This document shows, one piece after another, positions 349 to 41,009 of a stretch of DNA of 64,000 bases (its first letter is position 1; every line of letters starts with the position of its first letter). Where the stretch lies: IMG/VR virus record IMGVR_UViG_3300008261_000001, positions 62,001-126,000 of that record. One strand, written 5' to 3'. The notes beneath the pieces are model-generated. The model saw nothing but the letters and a program-made list of their open reading frames with translations. It ran no database searches and was not told the DNA's origin. Position numbers and translations under genes: made by a program.

Positions 349-352
349 GTAT

Positions 353-784: not shown

Positions 785-800
785 TTGGGAGGTGACTAAG

Positions 801-1139: not shown

Positions 1140-1163
1140 GGGGCTTGGTAAGGAGGTTAGAGC

Positions 1164-1535
1164 ATGAGAAATGTTACGGAGAGAGACTTAGAGACTGGGA
1201 AGCGTAGGTGGAAAAGTGAAGTTTGTTATTTATTGGATGAGGGTGCGTTTATTTTAGTGTTGGATGTGTTGCACGAGGGTTTATTGGAGTCAGGTTTTAA
1301 GAAGTTAAATGTGGGTGGTTTTGAGTATGAGTTAGTGACAGCGGATGGGGAGTATTGGATAAGGTTGAGTTTGAAAGAGAATTCTTTGTTGGAGGTGAGT
1401 TTGTATAACAAGTGGGACATATTGGGTCGGGTGGAGTTGGAGAGAAAAGATTGGATAAGTTTATGGGAGCGTATAAGGGATTTGTGGGAGTGGGTATTGA
1501 GGTTTGCGGCGAATAAGTATCCGAACAATAAATGA
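1164..1535 (+). CDS. Hypothetical protein, paralog of 801-1139
   Basis: RBS AAGGAGG upstream; paralogous motifs as above. Confidence 0.8.
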   Translation: MRNVTERDLETGKRRWKSEVCYLLDEGAFILVLDVLHEGLLESGFKKLNVGGFEYELVTADGEYWIRLSLKENSLLEVSLYNKWDILGRVELERKDWISLWERIRDLWEWVLRFAANKYPNNK

Positions 1536-1542
1536 TCGGGGT

Positions 1543-2472
1543 TTAGGCTAGTTCAGCGAGGGATTTTTGGATAGAGGCGATAACGCCTTTGGTTTCGACC
1601 TTGTAGATAAGTTCGAGGGTCTCTGGGTCATTGGCGTAGAGTTCTACTGCCTTTTTAGCTCTCTTAGCCCAGTGGATATTCATATCCCATTCGACACCGC
1701 CTTCGAGGGTGACGATCTTGGATTGATCAGTACCTGTTGCTACAGCACCTGTGGCGGGGGTGGATTCGATAGCTTGTAGGGTTTGTAGGTCTTCGTTAGG
1801 GGTGGGGTTGTTCTCTTCTTCTAGGGGTGTGGCATCGTTTTGGTCTTCGATGACGGTCACTTTAAAGGAAGAGCGTGTGCCTTCTAGTTCTTCGAGTTTG
1901 GAGAGTTCGCGGTCTATAGCGGAGGCATCGGTGAGGATGGTCTTTTGCTTAGAGGCGGTCTTCAGTGCGGGTGTGATGGACTTAGAGGCTTGTGCTTCAG
2001 CCATAGCGTTTGTATTTGAGTCGGAGGCTGAGGAAGCCGAGGAGATAGAGGCTCCGCTTGAGTCTTTGACGAAGGACACTTCTTTGGTGTCTTCATCTGA
2101 GGACTCGACAACGATGGGGAACTTGGTAGTGGGGGCTTCTGCCTCTTCCTTTTTGACCGTGGTGACGGAGCGTTCTTCGTCATAGACGACTTGCACCTTA
2201 CTAGGTGTCTCTGCTTTGGGGGTGGGTTTAACCACCACTGGGGTTTCCTCGGTGTCGGTGGAGGGGGTCAGCCACCCTCTCTTAATGCCAGCCTTGAGTT
2301 CGGGCATATCGACATTCTGTCCGTTGAACTTAAGTGTAAAGCCATCGAACTCGACGATATCGCCCTCGTAGATGTTCCGCTCTAGGCGACCGAGGTGGAT
2401 TGTGTTCTTAGCCTTGAACTTTAGGAACTTGCCCTTAGAAAAAGATAACTCGCTCATGTTTATGTACTCCAT
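1543..2472 (-). CDS. Hypothetical protein with acidic/low-complexity middle and a KTAS motif
   Basis: 309-aa ORF at the end of the minus-strand virion block; folded-looking termini around an acidic linker. Confidence 0.7.
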   Translation of the reverse strand: MEYINMSELSFSKGKFLKFKAKNTIHLGRLERNIYEGDIVEFDGFTLKFNGQNVDMPELKAGIKRGWLTPSTDTEETPVVVKPTPKAETPSKVQVVYDEERSVTTVKKEEAEAPTTKFPIVVESSDEDTKEVSFVKDSSGASISSASSASDSNTNAMAEAQASKSITPALKTASKQKTILTDASAIDRELSKLEELEGTRSSFKVTVIEDQNDATPLEEENNPTPNEDLQTLQAIESTPATGAVATGTDQSKIVTLEGGVEWDMNIHWAKRAKKAVELYANDPETLELIYKVETKGVIASIQKSLAELA

Positions 2473-27759: not shown

Positions 27760-28165
27760 GTTAAAAGGAAAACAGCCCCTTTTCTTGGAGGCAAATGTAC
27801 CCCCCTTGTGTTATCCATATCTTGTCGGAAATCCAAAAGGGGAAGGTTTTTTGAAATGGGTAGAGAAGCCCACGGCTAAAGAGACCATCCTTACATGGGG
27901 GGTAGAAGCCACAATCGAACAAATCTTAGCCGAGATGATTCGTTTAACCCTAGACAGAAGTGAGGTAGAGGGTTGGGGTGTTCGGCAGAAGAGTTTTAAT
28001 TTAGCCGAAAAGAGGCTAAAGGATTTGGGCGTAAACGACCTTGAAGTGTCGAACAAGCTGATTTATCCAAAAGACCCGTCTTTATTGGGGACTATCCTTA
28101 TATCGGAAAAGAAGTGCTTTCCTATTATTCACAATGTGAGCAGAGGATTGTGCGTACTAGAATAA
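27743..28165 (+). CDS. Hypothetical protein
   Basis: 140-aa ORF continuing the operon. Confidence 0.6.
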   Translation: MLEIVRLKGKQPLFLEANVPPLCYPYLVGNPKGEGFLKWVEKPTAKETILTWGVEATIEQILAEMIRLTLDRSEVEGWGVRQKSFNLAEKRLKDLGVNDLEVSNKLIYPKDPSLLGTILISEKKCFPIIHNVSRGLCVLE

Positions 28166-28233
28166 ATTATCCCAACTCTCTTTGAGTCTTATTATTGGGT
28201 AAGTGTTAAGACCCATTCTCAAAGGAGTCTCCC

Positions 28234-28416
28234 ATGTTAGACGACTACATTATCAAGATAGAGATTGAAAGAGAGAGGGATAGGAGAAGAAGGGTACAAG
28301 AGGAGGATGGGAGGCGGATACAGCTTCCGATACCAGAGTACGAGGATAGGGGCGAGGGTAGGGGCGAGACAAAGCCACAAGATGAACCGAAAAGGGTGAT
28401 AGTAATAGATCTGTAG
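28234..28416 (+). CDS. Small hypothetical protein
   Basis: RBS AAGGAG 5 nt before ATG; 60 aa, highly charged. Confidence 0.55.
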   Translation: MLDDYIIKIEIERERDRRRRVQEEDGRRIQLPIPEYEDRGEGRGETKPQDEPKRVIVIDL

Positions 28417-28477
28417 CGGTATAAAGGGGGGGTGTGGATAATCAAGTCCCACCTTTTCACCCTTTAGAGGACGCTCT

Positions 28478-29056
28478 ATGTCAGCGACTATTATTCTTGT
28501 GCGTGGTCTTACAGGTTCGGGCAAGACGACCCTTGCCGATCTTATTATTGGTGACGATGAAAACCGAGTGAGCATTTCTGTTGATGATTACTTCACAGAC
28601 GATGCTGGTTTTAACTTCGATCACACGAAGCTAAAGGAAGCCCACGATTGGTGTAAGAACAAGACCCTTGAGTTTATTCTAGAGGGCTACGAGGTGGTGG
28701 TTGTACACAACACATTCACTCGTAAGTGGGAGTGCGACCCCTACTTGGAGATGGCTAAGGAGAGGGGTTGTAACATCCATGTAATCAACCTGTACGATGC
28801 TGGGTTGAACGATGTGGAGTTATCCAATAGAAATGGTCACAATGTTCCTGCTCATGTGATTCAAGCACAGCGTAAGCGTTGGGATAAGGATGTTTACCGT
28901 GAGCGGAAGCAACATACACCACAGCAGAACTTCATGCCTTACCCTCCCCCTTATGGATATGGGAACTATCACCCTCAACAGCCGTTCGGTGGTTATCCCC
29001 CATATGTGCCTAACGAGGGTGGGTATCAGCGTAAGTCACCTCGCCCTAGTCGTTAA
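28478..29056 (+). CDS. AAA_33/N4BP2-like P-loop nucleotide or polynucleotide kinase with a P/Y/Q/G-rich tail
   Basis: IILVRGLTGSGKTT Walker A, SVDDYF, AHDWC, VVVHNTF..WE, RNGHNVP. Confidence 0.8.
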   Translation: MSATIILVRGLTGSGKTTLADLIIGDDENRVSISVDDYFTDDAGFNFDHTKLKEAHDWCKNKTLEFILEGYEVVVVHNTFTRKWECDPYLEMAKERGCNIHVINLYDAGLNDVELSNRNGHNVPAHVIQAQRKRWDKDVYRERKQHTPQQNFMPYPPPYGYGNYHPQQPFGGYPPYVPNEGGYQRKSPRPSR

Positions 29057-29146
29057 GTTTAGTCGTTAAGTTTAGTTTTTCTTAACCTATTACTCTTCTT
29101 ATTGTATAACCTCTCTTAAAGAGGCTACAAAAGAGGGTGTGGTTAA

Positions 29147-29572
29147 ATGGATAAGTTTAGAATAGGGCAGACGGTGCTCGTTGGGGAGAACTCTTTCGAC
29201 GAGCATACGATCATAACTATCACTAAAGATGATTTTGATTTGCTTTATGTTACGGACGATAAAAAGTCTATACGCTCGGAAAGCATTGTGGCGATATTAT
29301 CAGGACCTACTCAGCCTGAGACAGAGGATGTAGAAGACACCATTACGGTTCAAGACCCATACACAACAGACTACAACACGGAAATGTTCCGTTGGGGGGA
29401 CGAGGTTGTGTTCACCTCTAGGTATCTAGACGCTGAGATAGAGATAGAGGGGTATGTACTTGTACCTGGTAGGTCGTGGTGTGTCTTAACAGAAAAAGGT
29501 ATTTCCATACCCAATCGGCATTGGCGTGTACACAAAAATGCGATTCGCTTAAAGAACGACTTAAAGAAGTGA
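29147..29572 (+). CDS. Hypothetical protein
   Basis: 141-aa ORF with two SH3/KOW-like stretches (FRIGQTV.., FRWGDEV..). Confidence 0.6.
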   Translation: MDKFRIGQTVLVGENSFDEHTIITITKDDFDLLYVTDDKKSIRSESIVAILSGPTQPETEDVEDTITVQDPYTTDYNTEMFRWGDEVVFTSRYLDAEIEIEGYVLVPGRSWCVLTEKGISIPNRHWRVHKNAIRLKNDLKK

Positions 29573-29693
29573 GACCATTAATCAGACCATTAATCAGACC
29601 ATTTATCGTCTTTGATGTGTTTGGGGTCGATGGTGTTGCTGAGGATCTGTCGGGTGGTGTAGTAACCGATGGTTATGTAAATAATCAGTAGTG

Positions 29694-30158
29694 TCAAAGT
29701 GGTAGTCCCCTTTTTCTGGCAAGATTTCTAACTGCTCTGTAGCATGAAGAAGCGTCGAAATAGCCGACAATCTTTGCTATCTCTCTATAGGTTAGTCCAC
29801 TCTGTCTTCTTAGATTGTAGCTTAAAAAAGCATTTTTATCCAAAGACAAAGGGTCGGTGTCCCCTATTAACTGAGCATATGCGTTTATCCAATTTCGAGC
29901 GGTCATAGAGGTGACAGAGAAAAGTAGACCTATGTCTTGGGTGTTCATCCCATTTATGTATAGGCAGTAAGCATATTGAGTGGGTGCAGTTCTAGGATAG
30001 GGCAAGAAGTTCTTCTTAGCGTACTTTTTAATCCTAATACTCGCGTTGTGGGGGTGTGTAAGGCTTATGCCCAAAGCGTCACATATTTCTCTGTATGTAA
30101 GTCCATCCATGTAAAGTCTATAGGCGTTAGCCCAATCTATCTTGCTCTCACAAGTCAT
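29694..30158 (-). CDS. Multi-HTH DNA-binding protein
   Basis: Three HTH-like units: GLTYREICDALGIS, GMNTQDIGLLFSVT and GLTYREIAKIVGY. Confidence 0.7.
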   Translation of the reverse strand: MTCESKIDWANAYRLYMDGLTYREICDALGISLTHPHNASIRIKKYAKKNFLPYPRTAPTQYAYCLYINGMNTQDIGLLFSVTSMTARNWINAYAQLIGDTDPLSLDKNAFLSYNLRRQSGLTYREIAKIVGYFDASSCYRAVRNLARKRGLPL

Positions 30159-30468
30159 GTGTTTGCTCCCAGATCTCTAGGTCTCCATAATCACTCAAAA
30201 ACTTACGCTCCTCAGACAAAATAATGGATAGTTCATCTGAGGTCATAGAGTTATCCATTATAGACGAAGACTTGTCGTAAGAGACTACACAGAACCCATG
30301 TTCCCTTGCATAAGACCCTCCTTTGTTCAGTGCCTCAACCCAACAAAGAGCCGATAAGAAAGAGTTATGCGTGTCCTGCACAAAATGGATATGTGGACAA
30401 CCCTTATCCATTTTTATTTGAAGTGCTAGGGTTATAGACGATGTGAGGAAGAGCGTGGGCATAATCAC
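30148..30468 (-). CDS. Hypothetical protein
   Basis: 106-aa ORF overlapping the HTH gene start. Confidence 0.5.
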   Translation of the reverse strand: MIMPTLFLTSSITLALQIKMDKGCPHIHFVQDTHNSFLSALCWVEALNKGGSYAREHGFCVVSYDKSSSIMDNSMTSDELSIILSEERKFLSDYGDLEIWEQTHDL

Positions 30469-30494
30469 CTAAAGATGATGCGGTCAATGAGTGT

Positions 30495-31403
30495 TTATCC
30501 AAAAATAGAGTCCCACCAACAAGCTATGTCCCATTTGTTATCCGTAAGGTGATGATGCCCCACAACGCCCTTAAAGTATTCCACCAAGAAATCTTTATCC
30601 AATACATCATGTGTATTGGGAAAGCGATAGGGTACATCTAGGGTATCGCATAAGGACTTTACAGCGGAGCGAGTGGCTTGTGCTATGCGTGGGTCTAAGC
30701 TCAACACCTTACTTGGACCTCTAGAGGTAGGGTTGTCCACAATGGAAACTTGATAGCCGAGTTTGGTGTAGTGATCTTTCCATTTTACATCTGGCTGTTG
30801 GCAGATGTCGATGCCGACAGAGTGAGGGTTAACCCAACCTCCATGCCACGAAATATGCTGTAGATCGAGCCATTGGTAGATAGTAGCCTCTTGTTCATTT
30901 AGCCCTATGCCCGCATGACTAGACACCTTGCGGTCAGGATCTGAGAACACACGAAAACAATGCCGAGGGTCAAGCCCTCCCCAATGCACAACAATGAGGT
31001 GTGGTGGCTTGTTTCTACGAGTAGAGAAGTGACCGAACCTATGTAGGTCAAGACCACCATCTTGGTCGAAGTTTATGATTTGTGTTGAGCTATCTACGCG
31101 AACTCGTCTGTCTTTGTGTACCCAATAAGCGTCTAGTGACTCAACATAGTCGTAAAGTTTAAGAAGTTCAGCCCATGTGCCTCGCCCGAGTTTTCCGTCT
31201 ATCTGAGAAGATCCTTTTCCGTAAATCGCTGTCTGAAATTGGATAACCCCTAGAGCGAAGTCGTTCGAGTCGGCAGGGTTGGATAACAGAGGGTATTTCT
31301 CAAGGGCATTAGGGGGTATGCTATTCGCCCACCCTAGAGAAACAGAGGCGGTAGCGTTAAACTTTTTAGCTGAACCTAGCGTCTGTATAACAGAGTGAGA
31401 CAA
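30495..31403 (-). CDS. Endolysin: peptidoglycan-binding-like N-terminus plus N-acetylmuramoyl-L-alanine amidase (Amidase_2)
   Basis: FQTAIYG..DGKLGRGTW PG-binding-like segment; IVVHW, SSH, HGGWVNPHSVGIDI and VVGHHHL..K amidase motifs; TTG start after TAGGAG. Confidence 0.8.
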   Translation of the reverse strand: MSHSVIQTLGSAKKFNATASVSLGWANSIPPNALEKYPLLSNPADSNDFALGVIQFQTAIYGKGSSQIDGKLGRGTWAELLKLYDYVESLDAYWVHKDRRVRVDSSTQIINFDQDGGLDLHRFGHFSTRRNKPPHLIVVHWGGLDPRHCFRVFSDPDRKVSSHAGIGLNEQEATIYQWLDLQHISWHGGWVNPHSVGIDICQQPDVKWKDHYTKLGYQVSIVDNPTSRGPSKVLSLDPRIAQATRSAVKSLCDTLDVPYRFPNTHDVLDKDFLVEYFKGVVGHHHLTDNKWDIACWWDSIFG

Positions 31404-31432
31404 CTGATACTCCTATCTAGTGCGGTGTTTAC

Positions 31433-32800
31433 ATGAGCTTAGAACTCTTAATGCCAGATATAAACCAAGCTGTACAGCTACTTATCCTAAGCCATGCAAG
31501 CAAGGGTGGGTCTGTTTGCTTATACCGAAATGGAAAAGTGTGGAACAACCTATCTGCGTTATCCATTTTGAACGCTTGGTCACCCACACATAAAGTGGTT
31601 CAAAAAGGGTTCTTAGATGTATGTGGTACAGGCGGAGATGGTGGGAAAATGGGGGTGTTCATCACCGCGTCTTTGTTGAAGTCCATCTACAGAACAGGTG
31701 AAAGCCTAACCCCTTCGGAAGTGGAAGATTTCTTAGGGAACTTCAAAGAGGCAGTCAGCAAAAAGAAAAAGAAAGCCACCTACGATGTGCTGTTGGAGAT
31801 CGGGAGTAGATCAAAGCTCCATGCAGAACACCTAGAGAAGATCTGTGACGCTCTGATGACACATGGGGTTGACTCCCATATCTCATTAGAGCGTGGTAGG
31901 TCAGTCCATACGGAGGTTATCCAATCCGAGGCGTTGGAAACGCCTGTTATAGCTGGAATAGACACGGATCAGATTTCCTTAAAGGGTGCGATGTTTGCTT
32001 TCTTCGACTATCCATTATTCTCTTACACGCAAGTTCAAGATGCGATGGAACAGATGGGGGAGTTCGAGGGCAGACCTTTGTGTATAGTCTCACCGCTCAT
32101 GGGTAAAGAGGTGAAGGCGACCATAGCCCTCAATAGGAATAAGGGGGTGGTGGAGGTCTATGGGCTAGAAGCTCCACAGATCACTTGGAGCAAGGGGTGG
32201 TTAGAAGACCTTTGTGCTTTTACAGGTGGCACAATACACACAAAAATGGATAAGTCCTTTCCTGTGGAGTTTTATGGTTCAGCACTAGAGGTGTTAATCA
32301 AGCCTTCGTCTTTGCTGATAGAGCCATATGAGGATCATGCAGAACAGACAGCTAAACACGCTGAGGCGTTATTGAGAGAGGCTGAGTTTATCCCTCACGC
32401 ACACACACAAGATCTGTGGCGTAAGAGAGCTTCTTCTCTGATGGGGTCTTTGATCCGAGTCCAAGTGGGTGGGACGACCGAGGCGGAGTCTAGGGTGAAC
32501 TTAAACCTAGCCGAGAAATCTTTATTGTCCATGACTGACGCTCTAGAAAATGGATATGTCGAGGGGTCGATTCCATTTTTAGCGGAGGTGCAGTCAAGCT
32601 CTATAATAGGACACGCTATGCGTTGCCCTTTAAGGGTAGTCGCACACAACCTCAACCTCCCTCAACACTCCGTATTGGATAACCCAATACTAAGGGAGAG
32701 CTTCCCTACAGGTCGCTTAGTTTCCCTTATGGAGCGTTCTCTCTCTGTGGCGTACACACTAGGTACTATAGGTCACATAATCAAAGCAAAGGGGCATTAA
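31433..32800 (+). CDS. Divergent GroEL-like chaperonin
   Basis: DVCGTGGDG (cf. GDGTTT), IRVQVGGTTEAE (cf. IKVGAATEVE), ALENGYVEG, CPLRVVAHN (cf. PLRQIAEN). Confidence 0.7.
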   Translation: MSLELLMPDINQAVQLLILSHASKGGSVCLYRNGKVWNNLSALSILNAWSPTHKVVQKGFLDVCGTGGDGGKMGVFITASLLKSIYRTGESLTPSEVEDFLGNFKEAVSKKKKKATYDVLLEIGSRSKLHAEHLEKICDALMTHGVDSHISLERGRSVHTEVIQSEALETPVIAGIDTDQISLKGAMFAFFDYPLFSYTQVQDAMEQMGEFEGRPLCIVSPLMGKEVKATIALNRNKGVVEVYGLEAPQITWSKGWLEDLCAFTGGTIHTKMDKSFPVEFYGSALEVLIKPSSLLIEPYEDHAEQTAKHAEALLREAEFIPHAHTQDLWRKRASSLMGSLIRVQVGGTTEAESRVNLNLAEKSLLSMTDALENGYVEGSIPFLAEVQSSSIIGHAMRCPLRVVAHNLNLPQHSVLDNPILRESFPTGRLVSLMERSLSVAYTLGTIGHIIKAKGH

Positions 32801-32802
32801 AG

Positions 32803-33216
32803 ATGTTTAAGAACTATCATTGGACAGTGGTCGAAGCTGAAAATGCTTGTACGGGTTTTAAGCTCGCCAAACAAAGCGACAACACCTTCGAGAACTTCAA
32901 CCGATACTATATCGTCAACCCCAACACACAAATCCTTTTTGAGGAAATCGAGTACTTGATCGAGAGTACAAAGGACACCCGCTCCCCATCTCGGTCTCGC
33001 TCCTGTTGTTGCTTTGTCCTTCAAGGAAATAAGTACTTCTTCTATGTCAAGAAGTCCTCCTTAGTCAAAGCGGACAAGCTGTTTATCCAAAACATCGGCA
33101 GGATACTGCATGGAGGTGGCGACTTAACCGAGGACGACTTAAATAAGCTCGCTTCCTCTGTACAGAGGCTCAAGGCTTCCCTTAAAAGCACACCCAAGAA
33201 AGCGGATGGTCGATGA
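32803..33216 (+). CDS. Hypothetical protein
   Basis: 137 aa; its stop overlaps the first MTase module start (ATGA). Confidence 0.6.
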   Translation: MFKNYHWTVVEAENACTGFKLAKQSDNTFENFNRYYIVNPNTQILFEEIEYLIESTKDTRSPSRSRSCCCFVLQGNKYFFYVKKSSLVKADKLFIQNIGRILHGGGDLTEDDLNKLASSVQRLKASLKSTPKKADGR

Positions 33217-33833
33217 TAATCACCCTGTTGAGAAAGCCCCTAGACGGGAGCGTAGCTGAGAACGCCTTACAGCATGGCTGTGGGGCTATCAATATAGACG
33301 CTACAAGAGTAGGTTTTGTGAATGGAGAAAACCCCTCCGCCTCCTCACGAGAGGCGTACACTCCCAATCACTCGGCAGTGGCGGACATGAACGCGAGCGG
33401 TGTCATCTATTCCGATCCAACACGGCAACTCGGCAGGTGGCCCGCTAACTTTATCCTTAACCACCTAGAGAGCTGTGAGCTAAAAGGTACTAAGAAAGTT
33501 AAAGGGGCGATAAGCAAACCTTCGGTGGGATACAAAGCTAAGACCTCCACCTCTTGGTTCAACTCTAAAGATGGTATTCATAGGGTTGGTCATGCGGATG
33601 AAGATGGGAATGAAGAAGTAGCGGATTGGGCTTGTGTAGAGGGTTGCCCTGTCCAAGAGCTAGACCAACAAAGTGGACATCTGAAAAGTGGGAAGATGGG
33701 TGCTAAGTCATATCAAATGTGGGGGGTAAATGGGATATATGGGGGAGGTAAAGAACACCCTGCGACATATTATGGAGATGAGGGTGGTGCTTCTAGGTTC
33801 TTCATGCAGTTTAAGAAAGACCCAGAAGAATGA
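33213..33833 (+). CDS. Split beta-class MTase, insert module A1
   Basis: RKPLDGSVAENAL..INIDATRV..GRWPANFI..GGASRFF corresponds to the central insert of phage N6/N4 methyltransferases; no DPPY or FxGxG. Confidence 0.8.
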   Translation: MIITLLRKPLDGSVAENALQHGCGAINIDATRVGFVNGENPSASSREAYTPNHSAVADMNASGVIYSDPTRQLGRWPANFILNHLESCELKGTKKVKGAISKPSVGYKAKTSTSWFNSKDGIHRVGHADEDGNEEVADWACVEGCPVQELDQQSGHLKSGKMGAKSYQMWGVNGIYGGGKEHPATYYGDEGGASRFFMQFKKDPEE

Positions 33834-34408
33834 TAGAAATAAAAATCGGAGACTGCGTGGATAGGCTCAAAGACCTAGAGGATAACTCCGTTGACGCTAT
33901 TATTTCTGACCCCCCCTATGGTCTGAAGTTCATGAGTAAGGGTTGGGATGATATTGGAGAGGGTGCCGAACAACGAGAGTGGCACCGAGCTTGGCTTACT
34001 GAAGCCTATAGAGTCTTAAAGCCTAATGGAGTCCTTAAAGCCTTCTCAGGTACGAGAACTTTCCATCACCTCATAGCGATGATGGGAGAGGTGGGGTTCT
34101 CAGAGTTATCTGTGGAGGCATGGACATACGGAAGCGGTTTTCCAAAATCCCATAATGTGAGCAAGGCACTCGATAAAGGATTTGGGGCGGAAAGAACAGT
34201 AGTAGGGACGCAAAAAATGGGGGGTTCTGCGAGAAAACTAAAAGGTTCAAATAGGAACGGTCAGAAAATGGTCGGAGTTGACTTGGAATACGAAGAGACA
34301 TACGCAGAAATAACTATCCCCGCAACAGATGAAGCAAAAACATGGGAGGGATGGGGAACTGCTCTTAAGCCAGCTTGGGAGCCCATCTGCATAGGAGTTA
34401 AGAAATGA
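33830..34408 (+). CDS. Split beta-class MTase, catalytic module B (subtype 1a)
   Basis: GDCVDRL, DPPY (motif IV), RVLKPNG, GSGFPKSHN, WEGWGTALKPAWEP; no FxGxG. Confidence 0.85.
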   Translation: MIEIKIGDCVDRLKDLEDNSVDAIISDPPYGLKFMSKGWDDIGEGAEQREWHRAWLTEAYRVLKPNGVLKAFSGTRTFHHLIAMMGEVGFSELSVEAWTYGSGFPKSHNVSKALDKGFGAERTVVGTQKMGGSARKLKGSNRNGQKMVGVDLEYEETYAEITIPATDEAKTWEGWGTALKPAWEPICIGVKK

Positions 34409-35016
34409 TAATCACCCTCCTAAGAAAGCCCCTAGAGGGTACTGTAGCTGAGAACGCCTTACAGCATGGCTGTGGGGCTATCAATATAGACGCTACGAGA
34501 GTGTCCACTTCCGATAATCTTAATGGCGGGGCTTATCGTTGTGAAAACCCTACTGATAGTGAATCAGTTTCCTATTCTTTGAGAAAAGGGATAGGTGAGT
34601 ATGAGCAACCGAGTGGGAGGTGGCCAGCTAACTTTATCCTTAACCACCTAGAGGGCTGTGAACTAAAAGGCACTAAGAAAGTTAAAGAGGGTAAAAGTAG
34701 CTCTGCTGTTGGTGGCTCTGACAGAAAAGTAGGTCTTTATAAGGATGGACTTAAGAAAGAAGCGGAAAATCGCTATCGAGGAGAGGAAGAAGTGGCAGAT
34801 TGGGCTTGTGCCGAGGGATGCCCTATTAAGAAATTGGATACTCAGTCTGGGATACTCAAAAGTGGAGCATTGAAACCCGATGCTTATGTTAAAAATGACA
34901 GGGTCAACTCCTCTATGTTTGCAGGAGCAGGTACTTACTCAAATAAGGGATATTCATCTGAGGAGGGTGGAGCGTCTAGGTTCTTCATGCAGTTTAAGAA
35001 AGACCCCGAACAATGA
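34405..35016 (+). CDS. Split beta-class MTase, insert module A2
   Basis: Same conserved blocks as A1 with different variable segments. Confidence 0.8.
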   Translation: MIITLLRKPLEGTVAENALQHGCGAINIDATRVSTSDNLNGGAYRCENPTDSESVSYSLRKGIGEYEQPSGRWPANFILNHLEGCELKGTKKVKEGKSSSAVGGSDRKVGLYKDGLKKEAENRYRGEEEVADWACAEGCPIKKLDTQSGILKSGALKPDAYVKNDRVNSSMFAGAGTYSNKGYSSEEGGASRFFMQFKKDPEQ

Positions 35017-35600
35017 TAGAAATAAAAATCGGAGACTGCGTTGACCGACTTAAAGACCTCGCGGATAACTCTATTGACGCGGTTATTTCTGACCCTCCTT
35101 ATGGTGTTAAGGTATTAGGGAAGGGTTGGGATAATATCGGTGAGGGGATTCAACAACGAGAATGGCATAGAGGTTGGCTCATGGAAGCCTATAGAGCCTT
35201 AAAGCCTAATGGAGTCCTTAAAGCCTTTTCTAGTGCGGTCACTTATCATCACTTATTAGAGGTAATGGGAGAGGTGGGGTTCTCGGACTTGAGCGTAGAG
35301 GCTTGGGTTTATTCAAGCGGTATGCCCGCTGGAAACTTTGATTTGGCGAAGGGGGTTGAGTGTCAGATTCTCTTTGGTGACTCGAACAACAAGCAGTTTA
35401 AGAAACTTAAAGGTAGTCGTAGAGAGGGTAAAACAGGTTTGGGGCAACTCAACTTTTTACACGACTCAAGACCTGAGAACTACAAACAGCATGGGGCGTT
35501 TACGCTCGACCCTCAAACAGAGCAAGGTGCTTTGTGGGCAGGCTGGGGAACAACACTAAAGAAATCTTGGGAACCCATTTGCATTGGAGTTAAGAAATGA
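35013..35600 (+). CDS. Split beta-class MTase, catalytic module B (subtype 2a)
   Basis: DPPYGVKVLGK, SSGMPAGNFDL, WAGWGTTLKKSWEP; no FxGxG. Confidence 0.85.
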   Translation: MIEIKIGDCVDRLKDLADNSIDAVISDPPYGVKVLGKGWDNIGEGIQQREWHRGWLMEAYRALKPNGVLKAFSSAVTYHHLLEVMGEVGFSDLSVEAWVYSSGMPAGNFDLAKGVECQILFGDSNNKQFKKLKGSRREGKTGLGQLNFLHDSRPENYKQHGAFTLDPQTEQGALWAGWGTTLKKSWEPICIGVKK

Positions 35601-36166
35601 TAGAAATAAAAATCGGAGACTGCGTTGATAGGCTTAAAGACCTCGCGGATAACTCCGTTGACGCTATTATTTCTGACCCCCCCTATGGTCTGAAGTTCAT
35701 GGGTAAAGGTTGGGATGATATTGGAGAGGGTGCCGAACAACGAGAGTGGCATAGGGCATGGCTTACTGAAGCCCACCGCGTCTTAAAGCCTAATGGAGTC
35801 CTTAAAGCCTTCTCAGGGACGAGGACTTTCCATCATCTGATAGCGATGATGGAAGAAATAGGTTTCTCAGACTTGAGCGTAGAGGCTTGGGCATATGGGA
35901 GCGGTTTCCCGAAGTCTCACAACCTTGCCAAGCAGTTCGATAAGAAGGCTGGTGTAGAGGGTGAGATAATAGGTCATAAGCCCGGAGTGTCAGTAGAGGA
36001 CTCTCAAGGACATGGGGGCATCGCGAGAGGTGGTGTGGGGATTGTTCAGAAGAACGCGATGATACCCATTAGAGCTTCGGTGACGGATGACGCGAAAGTA
36101 TGGGAGGGATGGGGAACGGCTCTTAAACCAGCTTGGGAGCCCATCTGCATAGGAGTTAAGAAATGA
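35597..36166 (+). CDS. Split beta-class MTase, catalytic module B (subtype 1b)
   Basis: DPPYGLKFMGK, GSGFPKSHN, WEGWGTALKPAWEP; no FxGxG. Confidence 0.85.
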   Translation: MIEIKIGDCVDRLKDLADNSVDAIISDPPYGLKFMGKGWDDIGEGAEQREWHRAWLTEAHRVLKPNGVLKAFSGTRTFHHLIAMMEEIGFSDLSVEAWAYGSGFPKSHNLAKQFDKKAGVEGEIIGHKPGVSVEDSQGHGGIARGGVGIVQKNAMIPIRASVTDDAKVWEGWGTALKPAWEPICIGVKK

Positions 36167-36813
36167 TAATCACTTTGCTCAGAAAGCCCCTAGAGGGTAC
36201 TGTAGCTGAGAACGCCTTACAGCATCGCTGTGGGGCAATCAACATTGACGCTACAAGAGTGTCCACTTCCGATAATCTTAATGGTGGAGCGTATGCAGAA
36301 AACCCTACAGAGCGTGGGGGGGCGGATATGTGGACTTCAACAAGAAAAGGGGATTCTAACTGCTTTAAGCGTGGTGGTGGGGGTGAATATGAGCAACCGA
36401 GTGGCAGATGGCCCGCTAACTTTATCCTTAACCACCTAGAGGGCTGTGAGCTAAAAGGCACTAAGAAAGTTAAAGGGGCGATAAGCAAACCTTCGGAGGG
36501 AAACAAAGCTAAGACTTCTATCTCTATGAACAACTCTAAAGAAGGTATTCATAGGGTTAGTCACGCTGATGAAGATGGGAATGAAGAAGTGGCAGATTGG
36601 GCTTGTGTAGAGGGATGCCCTGTTAAGACCCTCGATGAACAAAGTGGTATTTCTAAAAGTACAGGTGGGCGTATCGGTAATAAGCAAGGAGCTTATGCTC
36701 ATCAGGGGCCGGGGGGGTGGTCAACGGATTATACGAAAGGTGACCCAGGTTTTGGAGATGAGGGTGGTGCTTCTAGGTTCTTTATGCAGTTTAAGAAAGA
36801 CCCCGAACAATGA
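36163..36813 (+). CDS. Split beta-class MTase, insert module A3
   Basis: Conserved A blocks; appears mosaic of A2 (5' part) and A1 (3' part). Confidence 0.8.
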   Translation: MIITLLRKPLEGTVAENALQHRCGAINIDATRVSTSDNLNGGAYAENPTERGGADMWTSTRKGDSNCFKRGGGGEYEQPSGRWPANFILNHLEGCELKGTKKVKGAISKPSEGNKAKTSISMNNSKEGIHRVSHADEDGNEEVADWACVEGCPVKTLDEQSGISKSTGGRIGNKQGAYAHQGPGGWSTDYTKGDPGFGDEGGASRFFMQFKKDPEQ

Positions 36814-37400
36814 TAGAAATAAAAATCGGAGACTGCGTGGATAGGCTCAAAGACCTAGAGGATAACTCCATTGATGCGGTTATTTCTGACCCCCCTTATG
36901 GTGTTAAAGTACTAGGGAAGGGTTGGGATAATATCGGAGAAGGTGCCTTACAGAGAGAGTGGCATAAAGGTTGGGTTCAAGAAGCCTATAGAGTCTTAAA
37001 GCCTAATGGAGTCCTTAAAGCCTTTTCTAGTGCGGTCACTTATCATCACTTATTAGAGGTAATGGGGCAGATGGGCTTCTCAGACTTGAGCGTAGAAGCG
37101 TGGGTTTATTCAAGCGGTATGCCCGCAGGGAACTTCGACTTGGCGAAGGGGGTTGAGTGTCAGCTTCTCTTTGGGGTGTCGAACTCAAAACACTTCCATA
37201 AACTTAAAGGGACAAAGCGAGCAGGGAAGACAGGGATAAACAAGTGGGGGGTAGAGCATGGCTCTCGTCAGGTGGACTCTCAGATAGGGGCTTCCGCCTT
37301 TGACCTAGAGCCACAGACGAAGGAGGGGGAGACATGGATGGGGTGGGGTTCTGTTCTCAAGAAATCTTGGGAGCCTATCTGCATAGGGGTTAAGAAGTGA
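36810..37400 (+). CDS. Split beta-class MTase, catalytic module B (subtype 2b)
   Basis: DPPYGVKVLGK, SSGMPAGNFDL, WMGWGSVLKKSWEP; no FxGxG. Confidence 0.85.
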   Translation: MIEIKIGDCVDRLKDLEDNSIDAVISDPPYGVKVLGKGWDNIGEGALQREWHKGWVQEAYRVLKPNGVLKAFSSAVTYHHLLEVMGQMGFSDLSVEAWVYSSGMPAGNFDLAKGVECQLLFGVSNSKHFHKLKGTKRAGKTGINKWGVEHGSRQVDSQIGASAFDLEPQTKEGETWMGWGSVLKKSWEPICIGVKK

Positions 37401-37858
37401 AAGACAAACACCTAAAAACACGGATTATCCAATGCGACTTGATTGCCTCTAACTCCCCTTGTTGTAGGCGGAAAGTGGGGGCTTTGGTGATAGACCCAGA
37501 GAGTAATGTGGTTATTTCCGAGGGGTACAATGGAACACCACGAGGATCTACTTATCCATTGTGTGGCGGAGAGTTCTGTTTAAGGGAAGAGTTATCCATT
37601 AAGAGTGGGACACAAAACGATGTGGGGTGCATACACGCGGAACAGAACGCAATCTATAATGCCTCAAGGACAGGGAACAGCACACTCAACAAGTGGATGA
37701 TCACTAACTGCGACCCTTGCCTTATGTGTGCGAAGGCTATTCACCAAGCGGGAATAACAAGGGTCTATCTACCTCTACACGAGCAAGTCCACATAGAGGG
37801 CGTAAAGTTCCTCAGAAACAACCAAGTAGAACTCATTAAGACGGAGAGCTTCAAATGA
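37397..37858 (+). CDS. dCMP deaminase
   Basis: SPCCRRKVGA, GYNGTP, HAEQNAI and PCLMC zinc-deaminase motifs. Confidence 0.9.
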   Translation: MKDKHLKTRIIQCDLIASNSPCCRRKVGALVIDPESNVVISEGYNGTPRGSTYPLCGGEFCLREELSIKSGTQNDVGCIHAEQNAIYNASRTGNSTLNKWMITNCDPCLMCAKAIHQAGITRVYLPLHEQVHIEGVKFLRNNQVELIKTESFK

Positions 37859-38637
37859 ACGAGATGATAGATTATTTCCTCAAGATGATTACGCCACCAG
37901 TGGAAGACGCTTATGTGCTAGTGTCTGACCCAAGTGAGATAAACTTCGATCTTTATCTAAAAGAGATAGGGGCTGAAGACTCACTTACAAGTACCTTCGA
38001 GCCTATGCTTCATGGTCTTATCCTCTTGGGAGAACCGACTGCGGACGAAGCAGATCAGATTATGAGGATACTAAAGCCTGGTGCTCATGTAGTTCTCATC
38101 CCTAAGAGCGACTCCCCCATAGGCTACAAGGGTGTGATCGCTATGGAGGACAACGGATTTGAGGTGCGTGACGCAATCTTCGTTGCCGAGGGGAACTCAG
38201 ATTTCTTCTATGGCTCAAAGGCAGGTCGGAGTGAGAGAGAGGCGGGGCTAGAGGGCTTTGAAGAGAAAGAGGGTCATGGCGGGATGACGGCTACAAAGAA
38301 CCAAGACATGAAAACAGGAAGCGGAAATGACCGAGACAACTCGCGTAAGAATATACACCCAACCGTTAAGCCGATTGATGTGATGGAGTGGTGTGCTAGG
38401 GATATTGGAAAGAAGTGTAAGGTGGTCGATCCATTCTTAGGAAGTGGGACAACGGGCTGTGCTATGGCTCGACTAGGTCACGACTTTGTGGGGATAGAGC
38501 TTCAGCCAGAATATGGAAAGATTTGTGAGGCTCGTATTCGTCATTGGATGCCGATAGGTACGGAACTCAAGTCCGAGGCTGTAGGGGTAGCGAAGTCCCC
38601 TACGAAGGGTGGGATGGTTTCTATATTTGACTTTTGA
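37855..38637 (+). CDS. Split beta-class MTase, SAM-binding module C (catalytic motif degenerate)
   Basis: HPTVKP, VVDPFLGSGTTG (motif I) and GIELQPEY; the N-terminus keeps RILKPG and AMEDNGFEVRD but has DPSE where DPPY is expected. Confidence 0.85.
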   Translation: MNEMIDYFLKMITPPVEDAYVLVSDPSEINFDLYLKEIGAEDSLTSTFEPMLHGLILLGEPTADEADQIMRILKPGAHVVLIPKSDSPIGYKGVIAMEDNGFEVRDAIFVAEGNSDFFYGSKAGRSEREAGLEGFEEKEGHGGMTATKNQDMKTGSGNDRDNSRKNIHPTVKPIDVMEWCARDIGKKCKVVDPFLGSGTTGCAMARLGHDFVGIELQPEYGKICEARIRHWMPIGTELKSEAVGVAKSPTKGGMVSIFDF

Positions 38638-39058: not shown

Positions 39059-39772
39059 ATGATACTTGGACTTGATCCGTCATTGAGAAACTTCGGTTGG
39101 GTGTTGATGACGGACGAGGGAGATTTCTTGGATAAGGGCATGATGAGTACGGAGGCGGATATGGTGTTTGTGGAGCGGTATATCTACTTGAGGGAGGGTC
39201 TGAGGAAAGTGGTGCAGATGCTGAGGGAAAAGTATCCAAATGATGTGATGAGGGTAGGCATAGAGTCGCCCATCTTTAACGACCTCTATTCTGAGGGTAT
39301 GTATGGGTTATTCCTCTACTCGAACGAGGCGTTGATGTTAGAGAAGTTGGATACGGTGTATTTAACACCGAACCAAGTGAAGGCTCATGCTCATGTGTAC
39401 TTGGGTCGTCCGAAGGGTTGGAAAATGCAGAAGGCGGACATGGTGGACGCGGTAAAGAAAGCCACACAAGGTCAAGGTGCTAAGGCGTGGAATCACCACC
39501 AAGCAGACGCTTATTGGGTGGGTCGTACAGCGGGTAGATTTTGGAAACTTGTGGAGGGGGATCTAGATATAGCGGACTTATCCGATTTGGAGAGGAAGCA
39601 TTTCACAGATCTAGAGCGGTATGTACAGGGAAAGAAAGCTGGCAAGATTAAGCGTATGGGGATAACCCACAAAGAAGATGACCGATATTTTAGGTGGTCT
39701 TCTATAACTACAACCGATGAGTCACCTAGCGTGGGAGACTCAGACAACCCGAACGGAGCGAGCGATGAGTAA
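39059..39772 (+). CDS. ruvC: RuvC-like Holliday junction resolvase
   Basis: ILGLDPSLRNFGW, VGIESP, KADM and HHQADAY acidic catalytic motifs. Confidence 0.8.
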   Translation: MILGLDPSLRNFGWVLMTDEGDFLDKGMMSTEADMVFVERYIYLREGLRKVVQMLREKYPNDVMRVGIESPIFNDLYSEGMYGLFLYSNEALMLEKLDTVYLTPNQVKAHAHVYLGRPKGWKMQKADMVDAVKKATQGQGAKAWNHHQADAYWVGRTAGRFWKLVEGDLDIADLSDLERKHFTDLERYVQGKKAGKIKRMGITHKEDDRYFRWSSITTTDESPSVGDSDNPNGASDE

Positions 39773-41009
39773 AGCACCGAATAAAAAGGTGGAGGGCGTG
39801 AAGTCAGCCCTCAATAAGAAGGCGGATTTGATGGGGACTCTTAAGGAGGTTGAGAAGGGTACGAAGGACTCTGCACTTGTAGAGCTAGACCCTGCGTCTT
39901 TGACAACATCTATGCCCCATATCTCTACAGGGGCTGTGGCGTTGGATTATCTCATTGGGGGCAAGGAGAACGCTCAAGGTGTGCGTCCATGTCCAGGTAT
40001 CCCTCGTGGGCGTATCACCAACATTTACGGCATGGCAGGTGCAGGTAAGACGACCATCGCTCTACAGACCGCAGCGAGCGTTTGTGCTGAGGGTGGGACT
40101 TGCGTGTACATAGATTGGGAGAACGAAGTTGAGCCTCGTTATGCCTCAGTCTTAGGTGTTCCCGTGACGGATAAAAATCATTTCCTTTTGCTTCAGCCTG
40201 AGACCCTAGAGCAAGGGTTCAAGCTCATGGTGAAGTTCGCTCATGCAGGGGTGGACTTAATCGTCGTGGACTCTGTGGGTGCAGGTGTACCTGAGGCGAT
40301 GTACAAGAAGGAAGCGGGCGAGCAAGGTGGTGTGGGTTTATTGGCTCGTCAATGGTCGCAGTTCTTGCCCTTGTTTAAGAAGGTTATTGCAAGCTCCAAC
40401 ACGGCTGTTATTGGTATCTCTCAGTTGCGTGAGGCTATCGGTGGTATGCCAGGTTTTGGTGCTGGACCTACGAAGAAGCCACAAGGCGGTCAGGCTTGGA
40501 CTTTCTACTCTACGCTCAAGATTATGCTCACCGTTATTGGAAAGGATAAAGGCAAGGAGTGGGATGGGCTACAGAACAAGATGATCGAGACGGTGAAGGG
40601 CAACATCGTCAAGGCGGCATTGGATAAGTGCAAGGTGTCGGACTCGTATAAGCACGAGGCTCAGTTCTACCTCATGTCGGGCAAGGGCGTAGATAACGAG
40701 CGTACGGTGATTGACTTGGCTATCGCCACGAACATCTTGGTTAAGAAGGGTGCTTGGTTCTCATGGATGGGACCAGAGGGCGAAGTGCGTGGGCAAGGGC
40801 TTGAGGGCTTTAGAGCTAACTTGCCTGAGGGTTGGCTCGACTTCATGTTCGCACAGGTGAAGCCATACCTTACTTCAAAAAAGGGAGACGAGGGTGGAGC
40901 TACCACAGCTTTGAGCGGTGGTGCAGGTGGTGCTTTGGAGTTGGGAGATGAAGCAGATGACGCTATGGAAGAGCTTGACGCTTTGTTCGGTGGTGAAGAC
41001 GAGGAGTAA
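39765..41009 (+). CDS. recA: RecA/UvsX recombinase
   Basis: GIPRGRITNIYGMAGAGKTT, YIDWE, LIVVDSV, ISQLRE, GGQAWTFYS, GAWFS; ATG 39765 preferred as start. Confidence 0.92.
   Translation: MSKAPNKKVEGVKSALNKKADLMGTLKEVEKGTKDSALVELDPASLTTSMPHISTGAVALDYLIGGKENAQGVRPCPGIPRGRITNIYGMAGAGKTTIALQTAASVCAEGGTCVYIDWENEVEPRYASVLGVPVTDKNHFLLLQPETLEQGFKLMVKFAHAGVDLIVVDSVGAGVPEAMYKKEAGEQGGVGLLARQWSQFLPLFKKVIASSNTAVIGISQLREAIGGMPGFGAGPTKKPQGGQAWTFYSTLKIMLTVIGKDKGKEWDGLQNKMIETVKGNIVKAALDKCKVSDSYKHEAQFYLMSGKGVDNERTVIDLAIATNILVKKGAWFSWMGPEGEVRGQGLEGFRANLPEGWLDFMFAQVKPYLTSKKGDEGGATTALSGGAGGALELGDEADDAMEELDALFGGEDEE

What the first reader, a model, noticed from the sequence alone, without database searches (positions are those of the whole stretch)
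33213..37400. Mosaic MTase modules point to recombinational shuffling of variable segments
Seen: conserved DNA blocks are near-identical between copies (ATGATAGAAATAAAAATCGGAGACTGCGT and AAAGCCTAATGGAGTCCTTAAAGCCTT in all four B; GCTAACTTTATCCTTAACCACCTAGAG in all three A) and flank unrelated variable segments. A3 shares VSTSDNLNGGAY and GEYEQPSGRWP with A2 but GAISKPS..KAKTS..GIHRV..HADEDGNEEV with A1. The first about 50 nt of the B genes pair 33830 with 36810 and 35013 with 35597, cutting across the subtype pairing of the rest of the gene (33830/35597 and 35013/36810). Inference: gene conversion or unequal crossover reshuffles specificity segments, loosely analogous to hsdS shuffling in type I R-M loci.
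Basis: partly seen in the sequence, partly recalled or inferred. Interest (0 to 1): 0.72.

Follow-up and report, generated by a model that had tools for sequence, protein, structure and literature searches.

The report
Recombining split methyltransferase array, jumbo phage
A 290-kb freshwater phage carries a row of coupled genes encoding separate pieces of a DNA methyltransferase in several versions; recombination within the phage and between related phages has swapped these pieces, probably to keep its DNA protected from many bacterial restriction enzymes.

Summary
All three quoted DNA blocks are exact in every copy. A3 is a statistically supported mosaic of A2-like and A1-like segments (p <= 5e-5). 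The first four informative sites of the B genes contradict the other 67.

The recombination inference is supported and extends further. The array is A1 plus a duplicated three-gene unit, [B1 A2 B2][B3 A3 B4]. Variable segments reassort almost freely across the whole family. B4 and one A3 segment are 95-100% identical to a phage whose neighbouring genes are 62-65% identical (dS 0.15 against 1.2-1.6). Relatives differ in module number and order.

It is not an hsdS-like switch. There are no inverted repeats, no recombinase was found among the neighbours checked, and the unique pieces are identical in metagenomes of three studies, 2019-2022.

The genes are pieces of one beta-class amino-methyltransferase:
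- B is the DPPY catalytic half.
- A is a recognition module without a Pfam family.
- C, present once, is the only SAM-binding part.

Relatives fuse these pieces in one chain, and a complex model passes its controls (0.87 against 0.34). Assembly, methylation and specificity are untested.

The parts
33213..33833 (+). A1: recognition-type module (206 aa) with no Pfam family. It has three variable segments, V1-V3, between conserved blocks.
   Evidence: ORF. No Pfam hit. It matches the middle part of one-chain methyltransferases. H/C/C/C positions are conserved family-wide.
33830..34408 (+). B1: catalytic half, subtype I (192 aa). It carries DPPY motif IV to motif VIII and a variable loop, and has no SAM motif I.
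   Evidence: PF01555 positions 1-93 of 221, E 5e-13. Alignment.
34405..35016 (+). A2: recognition-type module (203 aa).
   Evidence: Its V2 segment is 83% identical to that of P0121 from another phage, while V1 is 13% identical.
35013..35600 (+). B2: catalytic half, subtype II (195 aa).
   Evidence: PF01555 E 2e-10. Alignment.
35597..36166 (+). B3: catalytic half, subtype I (189 aa). It follows B2 directly.
   Evidence: PF01555 E 1e-13. Relatives have 86-88% identical copies although their C is only 59-63% identical. pN is 0.08-0.10 with synonymous sites saturated.
36163..36813 (+). A3: mosaic recognition-type module (216 aa). It is A2-like at the 5' end and the V1 flanks, A1-like in V2 and at the 3' end, and has its own V3.
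   Evidence: Its V1 region (36283-36462) is 90-98% identical in DNA to L013, while V2 and V3 are 43-55%.
36810..37400 (+). B4: catalytic half, subtype II (196 aa). Its first 61 nt are identical to B1.
   Evidence: It is 97% identical in protein to the B of L013, with dS 0.15 against 1.2-1.6 for the flanking genes.
37397..37858 (+). dCMP deaminase gene lying inside the array, with a GTG start overlapping the B4 stop.
   Evidence: PF00383 E 3e-20. Its position in or outside the array varies among relatives.
37855..38637 (+). C: the single SAM-binding subunit (260 aa). It has motifs X and I (HPTVKP, FLGSGTT) behind an N-terminal half whose motif IV is eroded (DPSE).
   Evidence: PF01555 positions 153-218 of 221. 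It is the only such part of this family in the 290-kb genome. Family alignment. phrog_67 covers residues 67-229.
33829..33889 (+). 61-nt exact block at the A/B junction and B start, shared with 36809-36869. It is a switch point in variant L040.
34001..34044 (+). 44-nt exact block inside B, shared with 36981-37024.
34423..34467 (+). 45-nt exact block in the 5' part of A, shared with 36181-36225. It is a switch point in L040.
33830..37396 (+). Tandem duplication of a three-gene unit, [B1 A2 B2] and [B3 A3 B4] (1767 and 1800 nt). Overall identity is 71%, in alternating stretches of 90-98% and 23-47%.
   Evidence: Repeat families D1 and D4.
39717..41009 (+). Phage RecA homologue 1.1 kb downstream. 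It is context only: the phage has its own homologous recombination protein.
   Evidence: PF00154 E 9e-42.

Best explanation
The window comes from an uncultured 290-kb freshwater phage. Positions 33213-38637 form one co-directional, translationally coupled gene row that encodes a beta-class amino-methyltransferase (probably N6-adenine) in separate pieces:
- four catalytic halves (B, with DPPY);
- three recognition-type modules (A);
- one SAM-binding subunit (C).

Shown:
- The pieces are mosaics.
- The row arose by duplication of a B-A-B unit.
- Conserved blocks are kept alike within the genome.
- Variable segments (V1-V3 in A, one loop in B) have been exchanged by homologous recombination at those blocks, both between copies in the row and between related phages.
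- Module number and order differ between relatives.

Inferred:
- B, A and C assemble into methyltransferases that share the single C.
- Different B and A versions give different target sequences.
- Recombination of segments keeps creating new specificities, which protects the phage DNA from diverse host restriction systems.
- Homing endonucleases found in this locus in relatives may start some of the exchanges.

The exchange is evolutionary. It is not a programmed switch.
For: Recombination:
- 3SEQ-type tests and site patterns support mosaics.
- Identity alternates between 90-100% and 14-55% within and between genomes.
- dS is 0.15 for B4 against L013, and 1.2 and 1.6 for the adjacent C and deaminase genes.
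- Among 111 distinct A modules, 87 pairs have one segment >= 70% identical and another <= 35%. Only 3-21% of pairs that share one segment type share another. All four combinations exist for every pair of segments.
- In B, identity of the N-terminal part and of the variable loop correlates at only r = 0.13.
- Conserved blocks share 67-90% identical codons within the window, against 54-57% between genomes.
- Arrays in relatives vary in module number and order, each with one C at the 3' end.
- L040 is a chimera with switches in exact 61-, 44- and 45-nt blocks.

Function:
- Pfam halves.
- One-chain relatives B-A-C', B-A-A'-A'-A'-C' and A-A-A-C.
- dN/dS is 0.07-0.31 for B and 0.37-0.45 for A paralogues, and all frames are intact.
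- No + strand terminator-like site lies between 33213 and 38598, the end of C. Every junction has an ATGA or GTGA overlap, most with a purine-rich stretch upstream.
- The complex model of B3+A3+C scores 0.87; the best control scores 0.34. That mark was reached by 51 of 78 solved complexes and 2 of 108 mismatched pairs.
- Confident interface residues fall in invariant columns: 24 of 25 in A3 (p 3e-8) and 49 of 74 in B3 (p 0.001).

Relatives carry an intein with a LAGLIDADG domain in C (L033) and HNH genes inside the array (L038, L039).
Against: - No methylation, binding or specificity data exist.
- The complex model was folded without alignments. It may only replay the packing of one-chain methyltransferases, and residue pairs were not given.
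- C already has its own N-terminal half, so how a B half would reach C's SAM pocket is unclear.
- The model of C alone is mediocre (pLDDT 67) and superposes badly on solved enzymes (TM 0.2).
- The A model is poor (pLDDT 61) and has no structural match.
- The family-wide counts use cluster representatives at 50% identity, which under-counts concordant pairs.
- L040 could be an assembly chimera. I found no second copy of its junctions.
- Short-read contigs break at the repeats, so reads neither confirm nor exclude variants within one population.
Confidence: 0.75

Rival explanations
1. Programmed, rapid switching as in phase-variable type I hsdS loci or shufflons: a dedicated recombinase rearranges the modules within a population and gives alternative specificities on short time scales.
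For: Many near-identical blocks flank variable segments. One contig (L040) is otherwise 100% identical but carries two exchanges.
Against: - All copies are direct repeats, and only weak chance-level inverted repeats occur.
- No site-specific recombinase was found among the neighbours checked.
- The array is the same in a second assembly.
- All unique pieces are 100% identical in runs of three studies from 2019-2022, and no joints were seen.
- Shared segments are mostly 3-10% diverged.
Confidence: 0.04
2. No recombination: the copies diverged after duplication, with fast, selection-driven change in some segments and constraint in others.
For: The conserved blocks are also the predicted protein interfaces, so some DNA conservation follows from protein constraint. 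dN/dS is higher in A (0.37-0.45) than in B.
Against: - Rate differences cannot make A3 nearest to A2 in one segment and nearest to A1 in the next.
- They cannot give a tenfold lower dS in B4 than in the flanking genes against L013.
- They cannot produce all four combinations of segment types.
- Codon identity in the conserved blocks exceeds what the same amino acids give between genomes.
Confidence: 0.03
3. The A and B ORFs are decaying fragments of once complete methyltransferase genes, left by rearrangements. Only C, or nothing, still works.
For: No B has a SAM-binding motif and no A has a Pfam domain. C has an eroded catalytic motif. No single ORF is a complete enzyme.
Against: - Seven frames are intact and every junction is a precise ATGA or GTGA overlap.
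- DPPY is invariant.
- dN/dS is 0.07-0.31 in B, and B3 types are kept at pN 0.08-0.10 while synonymous sites are saturated.
- The separate-gene layout recurs in 15 fetched relatives with B, A and C genes.
- Stand-alone B-like proteins number more than 4000 clusters. Among the 150 best representatives matching A2, 57 are stand-alone A.
Confidence: 0.06
4. The pieces are joined into one long protein by programmed frameshifting at each junction, so this is a conventional multi-domain enzyme.
For: Each gene lies in the -1 frame of the one before it. One-chain relatives exist.
Against: - The junction sequences (GTTAAGAAATGA, GAACAATGA) hold no slippery heptamer. Most starts have a purine-rich stretch such as GGAG or AAGAAAG 6-12 nt upstream (read directly from the sequence).
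- A joined chain would order the parts A-B-A-B-B-A-B, unlike the B-A(n)-C order that dominates the one-chain relatives. A few representatives do show mixed orders.
Confidence: 0.04

Closest known systems
One-chain beta-class N6-adenine/N4-cytosine DNA methyltransferases (Pfam PF01555). Examples are mycobacteriophage 'DNA methylase' genes, the single ORF of huge phage LR745208, and the solved CcrM (6PBD) and M1.HpyAVI (5HEK).
   Same: - The motif order is the same: DPPY half, then a recognition region with the RKPL...NID...GRWPAN pattern, then HPTxKP and FxGSGTT.
- B is about 45% identical to mycobacteriophage enzymes and A about 30%.
   Different: - Here the parts are separate genes in unequal numbers (4 B, 3 A, 1 C).
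- C carries an extra, catalytically eroded N-terminal half.
- No solved structure covers the A module.
Multispecific cytosine-C5 methyltransferases of Bacillus phages (SPR, phi3T, rho11s; Trautner and co-workers, cited as references 86-87 in PMC7544214).
   Same: - Phage enzymes in which several target-recognising modules share one catalytic and cofactor core.
- They protect the phage against several restriction systems.
- The modules are exchangeable.
   Different: - They belong to a different family (C5, not the amino-methyltransferase family PF01555).
- They are one polypeptide. Only relatives such as P0123, P0125 and P0122 have tandem A modules in one chain.
- Here even sub-segments of a module reassort.
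Domain movement of target recognition domains in Helicobacter pylori restriction-modification genes (PMC3077401, PMC3467074, PMC3983042, PMC3575425).
   Same: - Recognition sequences flanked by conserved repeats move between positions and between genes by homologous recombination.
- There is no dedicated recombinase.
- The result is mosaic alleles and new specificities.
   Different: - Those cases are bacterial chromosomes and type I, IIG and III systems.
- Here the setting is a phage gene row of a split type II-like orphan enzyme, with exchange between co-circulating phages and units smaller than a domain.
Phase-variable type I hsdS loci (inverting specificity genes).
   Same: Several alternative specificity segments with shared conserved blocks lie next to one methyltransferase core.
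   Different: - There are no inverted copies.
- No neighbouring tyrosine or serine recombinase was found.
- There is no HsdS, HsdM or HsdR.
- There is no evidence of switching within a population.
Heterodimeric beta-class enzymes with one eroded partner (MettL3-MettL14, ciliate MTA1-MTA9; PMC7544214).
   Same: One subunit has an intact motif IV and its partner has a degenerate one. C has DPSE, and other residues in relatives.
   Different: - In those pairs the active subunit binds SAM itself.
- Here the DPPY subunits lack any SAM motif, and the eroded one has the only SAM motif.

Membership tests
Beta-class amino-methyltransferase (PF01555 N6_N4_Mtase) | Catalytic motif IV, (D/N/S)PP(Y/F/W) | tested here: met
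   DPPY is invariant in B1-B4. It is not met in C, which has DPSE and is variable in relatives.
Beta-class amino-methyltransferase (PF01555 N6_N4_Mtase) | SAM-binding motif I (FxGxG) preceded by motif X | tested here: met
   Present only in C (HPTVKP, FLGSGTT; PF01555 positions 153-218). Absent from every B and A. C is the only copy of this family in the genome.
Beta-class amino-methyltransferase (PF01555 N6_N4_Mtase) | Order IV-VIII, recognition region, X, I-III within one polypeptide | tested here: not met
   The order is kept only across separate genes, for example B3-A3 and then C. One-chain relatives keep it in one ORF.
Beta-class amino-methyltransferase (PF01555 N6_N4_Mtase) | Methyl transfer to DNA adenine N6 or cytosine N4 | not testable with these tools
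   Needs expression and methylation mapping.
Phase-variable type I hsdS shuffling locus | Inverted partial specificity genes sharing repeats | tested here: not met
   All modules lie on the + strand. Only weak inverted repeats of 16-34 nt occur.
Phase-variable type I hsdS shuffling locus | Adjacent site-specific recombinase | tested here: not met
   The neighbours checked are an amidase, an HTH protein, a RecA homologue and unknowns. None is a tyrosine or serine recombinase. Only genes within about 4 kb were checked.
Multispecific phage methyltransferase (several recognition modules per core) | More recognition modules than cofactor-binding cores | tested here: met
   There are 3 A and 4 B for 1 C here, and exactly one C in each of the 15 fetched relatives that hold B, A and C genes. 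Tandem A modules occur in single chains in relatives.
Multispecific phage methyltransferase (several recognition modules per core) | Each module confers its own target sequence | not testable with these tools
   Needs methylome data or module swaps.
Domain movement by homologous recombination at flanking repeats | The same variable segment is found in different positions or genes between conserved flanks, with conflicting relationships of neighbouring segments | tested here: met
   A3 V2 resembles A1 V2, while the A3 V1 flanks resemble A2. Reassortment is family-wide. Tracts shared between genomes have sharp edges.
Multi-subunit (split) methyltransferase | The separate products bind each other | tested here: inconclusive
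   The complex model scores 0.87 against a best control of 0.34. That mark was reached by 51 of 78 solved complexes and 2 of 108 mismatched pairs. Fusion relatives point the same way. There is no experiment.

The most novel reading that the evidence does not exclude
A combinatorial, three-part DNA methyltransferase.

- One SAM-binding subunit (C) is shared by alternative catalytic halves (B) and recognition subunits (A).
- The motif-IV strand of B docks against the motif-I strand of C to complete the active site.
- C's own eroded half acts as a stand-in that B displaces.
- Target specificity is built from four small loop cassettes (V1-V3 in A, one in B) that aquatic giant phages trade among themselves.

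This would be a natural mix-and-match system for DNA recognition.
Probability: 0.3. Interest if true: 0.82.

Novelty: new variant of a known kind. Interest (0 to 1): 0.62.

Why it matters
Phage methyltransferases are a main answer to bacterial restriction, and how they gain new target sequences is poorly understood outside type I and type III systems.

This locus offers three things.

1. It is a natural case in which a type II-like amino-methyltransferase is divided into catalytic, recognition and cofactor genes in unequal numbers.

2. It shows exchange of pieces smaller than a domain across a whole clade of uncultured aquatic giant phages. In effect this gives a ready-made table of which loops vary independently.

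3. The recognition module has no Pfam family and no solved structure, yet it matches thousands of proteins: 7978 cluster representatives at E <= 0.001.

If the assembly model holds, the system could guide the design of methyltransferases with chosen specificity. It could also explain how large phages with broad exposure to restriction systems stay protected. The recombination result alone is a solid, moderately interesting example of a known evolutionary process in a new setting.

Tried and rejected
- **Fold of A.** The AlphaFold model is poor (pLDDT 61). Only the small core at residues 85-105, 135-160 and 200-216 is confident. A search of 48,161 PDB chains gave no match with Z >= 2. No PDB relative was found by sequence.
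- **Fold of C.** pLDDT is 67. All top Foldseek hits are beta-class methyltransferases over 226-278 columns, but at TM about 0.2 and rmsd 15-19 A. The model therefore does not settle whether the two halves of C pack as one domain.
- **Profile comparison of B with C.** Only a weak local match at the LKPxG region (E 0.011, probability 3.7%). The homology of C's N-terminal half to B rests on that match, the phrog_67 overlap and a by-eye alignment.
- **Reads.** Only assembled contigs were available, and they break at the repeats. No joints were seen in any run, and nothing can be concluded about minority orders.
- **L040 chimeric junctions.** Scans of the viral and metagenome contig collections with the shared 26-mer found only the same phage and more distant relatives. 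There is no independent copy of the chimeric junctions.
- **Deposited phages.** DNA search found nothing similar apart from a 48-nt stretch in a Rhizobium phage methylase gene.
- **Inversion system.** Inverted repeats are at chance level.
- **Frameshift fusion.** No slippery sites at the junctions.
- **Internal regulation.** Promoter- and terminator-like sites are at or below the number in shuffles.
- **Literature.** Five full-text searches found no description of such split arrays. That is not proof of absence.

Full report
**Setting.** The window is positions 62001-126000 of a 290,179-bp virus record from IMG/VR, estimated 93% complete. The same DNA occurs in lake and freshwater metagenomes from many studies. 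No cultured phage is close. The nearest deposited record is an uncultured 485-kb phage, with RecA 51% identical.

**Checking the observation.**
- Between 33213 and 38637 nine + strand ORFs follow one another, each overlapping the next by ATGA (GTGA once): A1, B1, A2, B2, B3, A3, B4, a dCMP deaminase and C.
- Sliding identity shows that A3 is 80-97% identical to A2 and 23-27% to A1 in alignment columns 76-120. In columns 300-450 it is 73-97% identical to A1 and 13-57% to A2.
- A 3SEQ-type permutation test gives p <= 5e-5 for A3 as a recombinant of A1 and A2. The result holds when only well-aligned columns are used.
- In B, the four informative sites within the first 50 nt group B1+B4 against B2+B3. 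From site 61 on, 67 sites group B1+B3 against B2+B4. B4 tests as a B1 x B2 recombinant at p about 2e-4.

**History of the array.**
- Aligning 33830-35596 with 35597-37396 shows a tandem duplication of a three-gene unit, [B1 A2 B2] and [B3 A3 B4]. Overall identity is 71%, in stretches of 90-98% alternating with 23-47%.
- The A1-like part of A3 runs from V2 to the gene's end and on into the first 61 nt of B4, interrupted by a private V3.
- Conserved blocks are more alike within this genome than the same amino acids require. Codons encoding the same residue are identical in 67-90% of cases between copies here, against 54-57% between genomes. That is the signature of recent duplication or homogenisation by gene conversion.

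**Exchange between phages.**
- Against relative L013, DNA identity is 95-100% across B4 and 90-98% across V1 of A3. It is 43-55% in V2 and V3 of the same A gene and 62-65% in most of the deaminase gene, with sharp edges.
- Synonymous divergence is 0.15 for B4, against 1.2 for C and 1.6 for the deaminase.
- B3 has 86-88% identical counterparts in phages whose C is only 59-63% identical. There the synonymous sites are saturated and pN is 0.08-0.10. That points to an old type held by strong purifying selection.
- Across 111 distinct A modules from databases and fetched loci, 87 pairs have one of V1-V3 at >= 70% identity and another at <= 35%.
- Only 3-21% of pairs sharing one segment type share another, and all four combinations exist for every pair of segments.
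- Each variable segment of A2 and A3, and two of the three in A1, has a 76-95% identical counterpart in a module of another phage whose other segments differ. V1 and V3 of A2 reach only 59% and 58%, and V1 of A1 42%.
- The variable loop of B reassorts in the same way (r = 0.13 between identity of the N-terminal part and of the loop).
- These counts use cluster representatives, which removes near-identical whole modules and so overstates the discordance somewhat.

**Structural variants.**
- Fifteen of the fetched loci hold B, A and C genes. They show B-A-C, A-B-deaminase-C, B-A'-B-deaminase-B-A'-C, B-A-A-B-A'-A'-C, A'-B-B-A fused to C, and other orders. Each has exactly one C, at the 3' end.
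- A related strain in run X5 matches up to module borders and then continues differently. For example, a B start follows the end of B3 where this genome has A3.
- Contig L040, from an NCBI metagenome assembly, is 100% identical to the window over 28104-33889. It then carries a B gene made of B4 (first ~180 nt) and B1 (the rest), both at 100%. An A gene follows that starts as A2 and continues as A3.
- The three switches in L040 lie in exact shared blocks of 61, 44 and 45 nt.
- If L040 is real, it shows very recent gene conversion and unequal crossover. An assembly chimera cannot be excluded, and I found no second copy of its junctions.

**Against a programmed switch.**
- There are no inverted copies and no site-specific recombinase among the neighbours checked.
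- A second assembly has the same array.
- The unique pieces are 100% identical in runs of three studies from 2019-2022, and no joints were seen.

**What the genes are.**
- B matches the first half of PF01555 (positions 1 to about 100 of 221), with invariant DPPY and no SAM motif.
- C matches the last part (positions 153-218), with HPTVKP and FLGSGTT.
- A has no Pfam family.
- The genome has no other SAM-binding part of this family. Three other ORFs of about 410 aa belong to a different methyltransferase class.
- A exhaustive profile-free search with A2 found 7978 representatives. Among the best 150, 57 are stand-alone A. Others are one chain: B-A-C', B-A-A-C', B-A followed by three further partial A units and C' (P0123, P0125), A-A-A-C (P0122) and A-C.
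- The 485-kb phage has B-A-C' in one ORF.
- A is thus the region that lies between motif VIII and motif X in ordinary beta-class enzymes, where the target recognition domain sits (PMC7544214).
- Its family-wide invariant residues include His91, Cys95 and Cys148, with Cys152 nearly invariant. This suggests a zinc site, which is an inference.
- The three variable segments are the low-confidence stretches of the model, between a confident small core.
- The N-terminal 120 residues of C resemble the B half (LKPG and GFE blocks) but have lost motif IV.

**How it probably works (inference).**
- The fusions argue that B, A and C are parts of one enzyme.
- A structure model of B3+A3+C scored 0.87 against 0.34 for the best control. 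That mark was reached by 51 of 78 solved complexes and 2 of 108 mismatched pairs.
- The confident contacts include B residues 20-29 (the strand ending in DPPY) and C residues 188-196 (the strand before FLGSGTT). This is what one expects if B completes C's active site as in one-chain enzymes. Residue pairs were not reported, however, and the model may simply recall known folds.
- Confident contact residues lie in invariant columns: 24 of 25 in A3 and 49 of 74 in B3. The conserved blocks would then be both the common docking surfaces and the DNA substrates for recombination, while the variable loops are free.
- Intact frames, low dN/dS, purine-rich stretches upstream of most overlapping starts and the absence of + strand terminator-like sites before the end of C fit a co-expressed set of subunits.
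- The likely role is methylation of phage DNA at several target sequences to escape host restriction. DPPY and the database names point to adenine N6.

**A possible driver.** In relatives the locus holds homing elements. L033 has an intein with Hint and LAGLIDADG domains inside C, and L038 and L039 have free HNH endonuclease genes right after the B3-type gene. Double-strand breaks made by such enzymes during co-infection, repaired from the other phage with co-conversion of flanks, would give exactly the patchy tracts seen. The phage also encodes a RecA homologue 1.1 kb downstream. This link is an inference.

**Comparison and novelty.**
- Movement of recognition domains by recombination is known in Helicobacter pylori (PMC3077401, PMC3467074, PMC3983042).
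- Phage enzymes with several recognition modules are known for C5 methyltransferases of Bacillus phages (references 86-87 in PMC7544214).
- Beta-class heterodimers with an eroded partner are known (PMC7544214).
- What I did not find described has three parts. First, a beta-class amino-methyltransferase split into catalytic, recognition and cofactor genes in unequal copy numbers. Second, reassortment of sub-domain loops across a phage clade. Third, tandem A modules in single chains.
- I rate it a new variant of a known kind. The recombination claim is solid. The assembly and specificity model is plausible but untested.

Noticed in passing
L033:10001-11914: In a 297-kb relative the C gene is interrupted in frame by about 360 residues with Hint and LAGLIDADG domains. 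This is an intein with a homing endonuclease inside the SAM-binding subunit.
   Followed up: partly
L038:3160-3549 and L039:1007-1627: Free-standing HNH endonuclease genes sit inside the array of close relatives, directly after the B3-type gene. The window has an ATGA overlap with A3 at that position.
   Followed up: partly
L040:5727-6605 (NCBI GCA_031546345.1, contig JAVQIO010056482.1): The contig is 100% identical to the window over 5.8 kb, then has a perfect B4/B1 chimeric gene and an A2/A3 chimeric gene. The switches lie in exact 61-, 44- and 45-nt blocks. It is either a very recent recombinant strain or an assembly chimera.
   Followed up: partly
genome positions 217750-218973, 273216-274460 and 276883-278124 (outside the window): Three paralogous ORFs of about 410 aa have a SAM motif (D-x-S-x-GWG) upstream of SPPYF. 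They form a second, differently ordered methyltransferase-like family in the same phage.
   Followed up: no
window 37397-37858: A dCMP deaminase gene sits between B4 and C with a GTG start overlapping the B4 stop. In relatives it lies inside the array at different places, or 6-8 kb downstream.
   Followed up: partly
window 32803-33216: A 137-aa ORF with no Pfam or PHROG match ends in an ATGA overlap with A1, so it may be co-translated with the array. It is conserved in L040.
   Followed up: no
P0123, P0125 and P0122 (database proteins): Single chains of 899-1164 aa carry three or four tandem copies of the A core (GRWP...GGASRFF). Some hold a long insertion in the SAM-binding part. They are candidate multi-target amino-methyltransferases.
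   Followed up: partly
window 39059-39772: A 237-aa ORF just upstream of the RecA homologue starts like a RuvC-type resolvase (by eye only) but has no Pfam hit.
   Followed up: no
window 1-2000: GC skew is unusually high here (0.51, against about 0.3 or less in absolute value elsewhere). Two short tandem repeats lie at 39-110 and 302-348.
   Followed up: no
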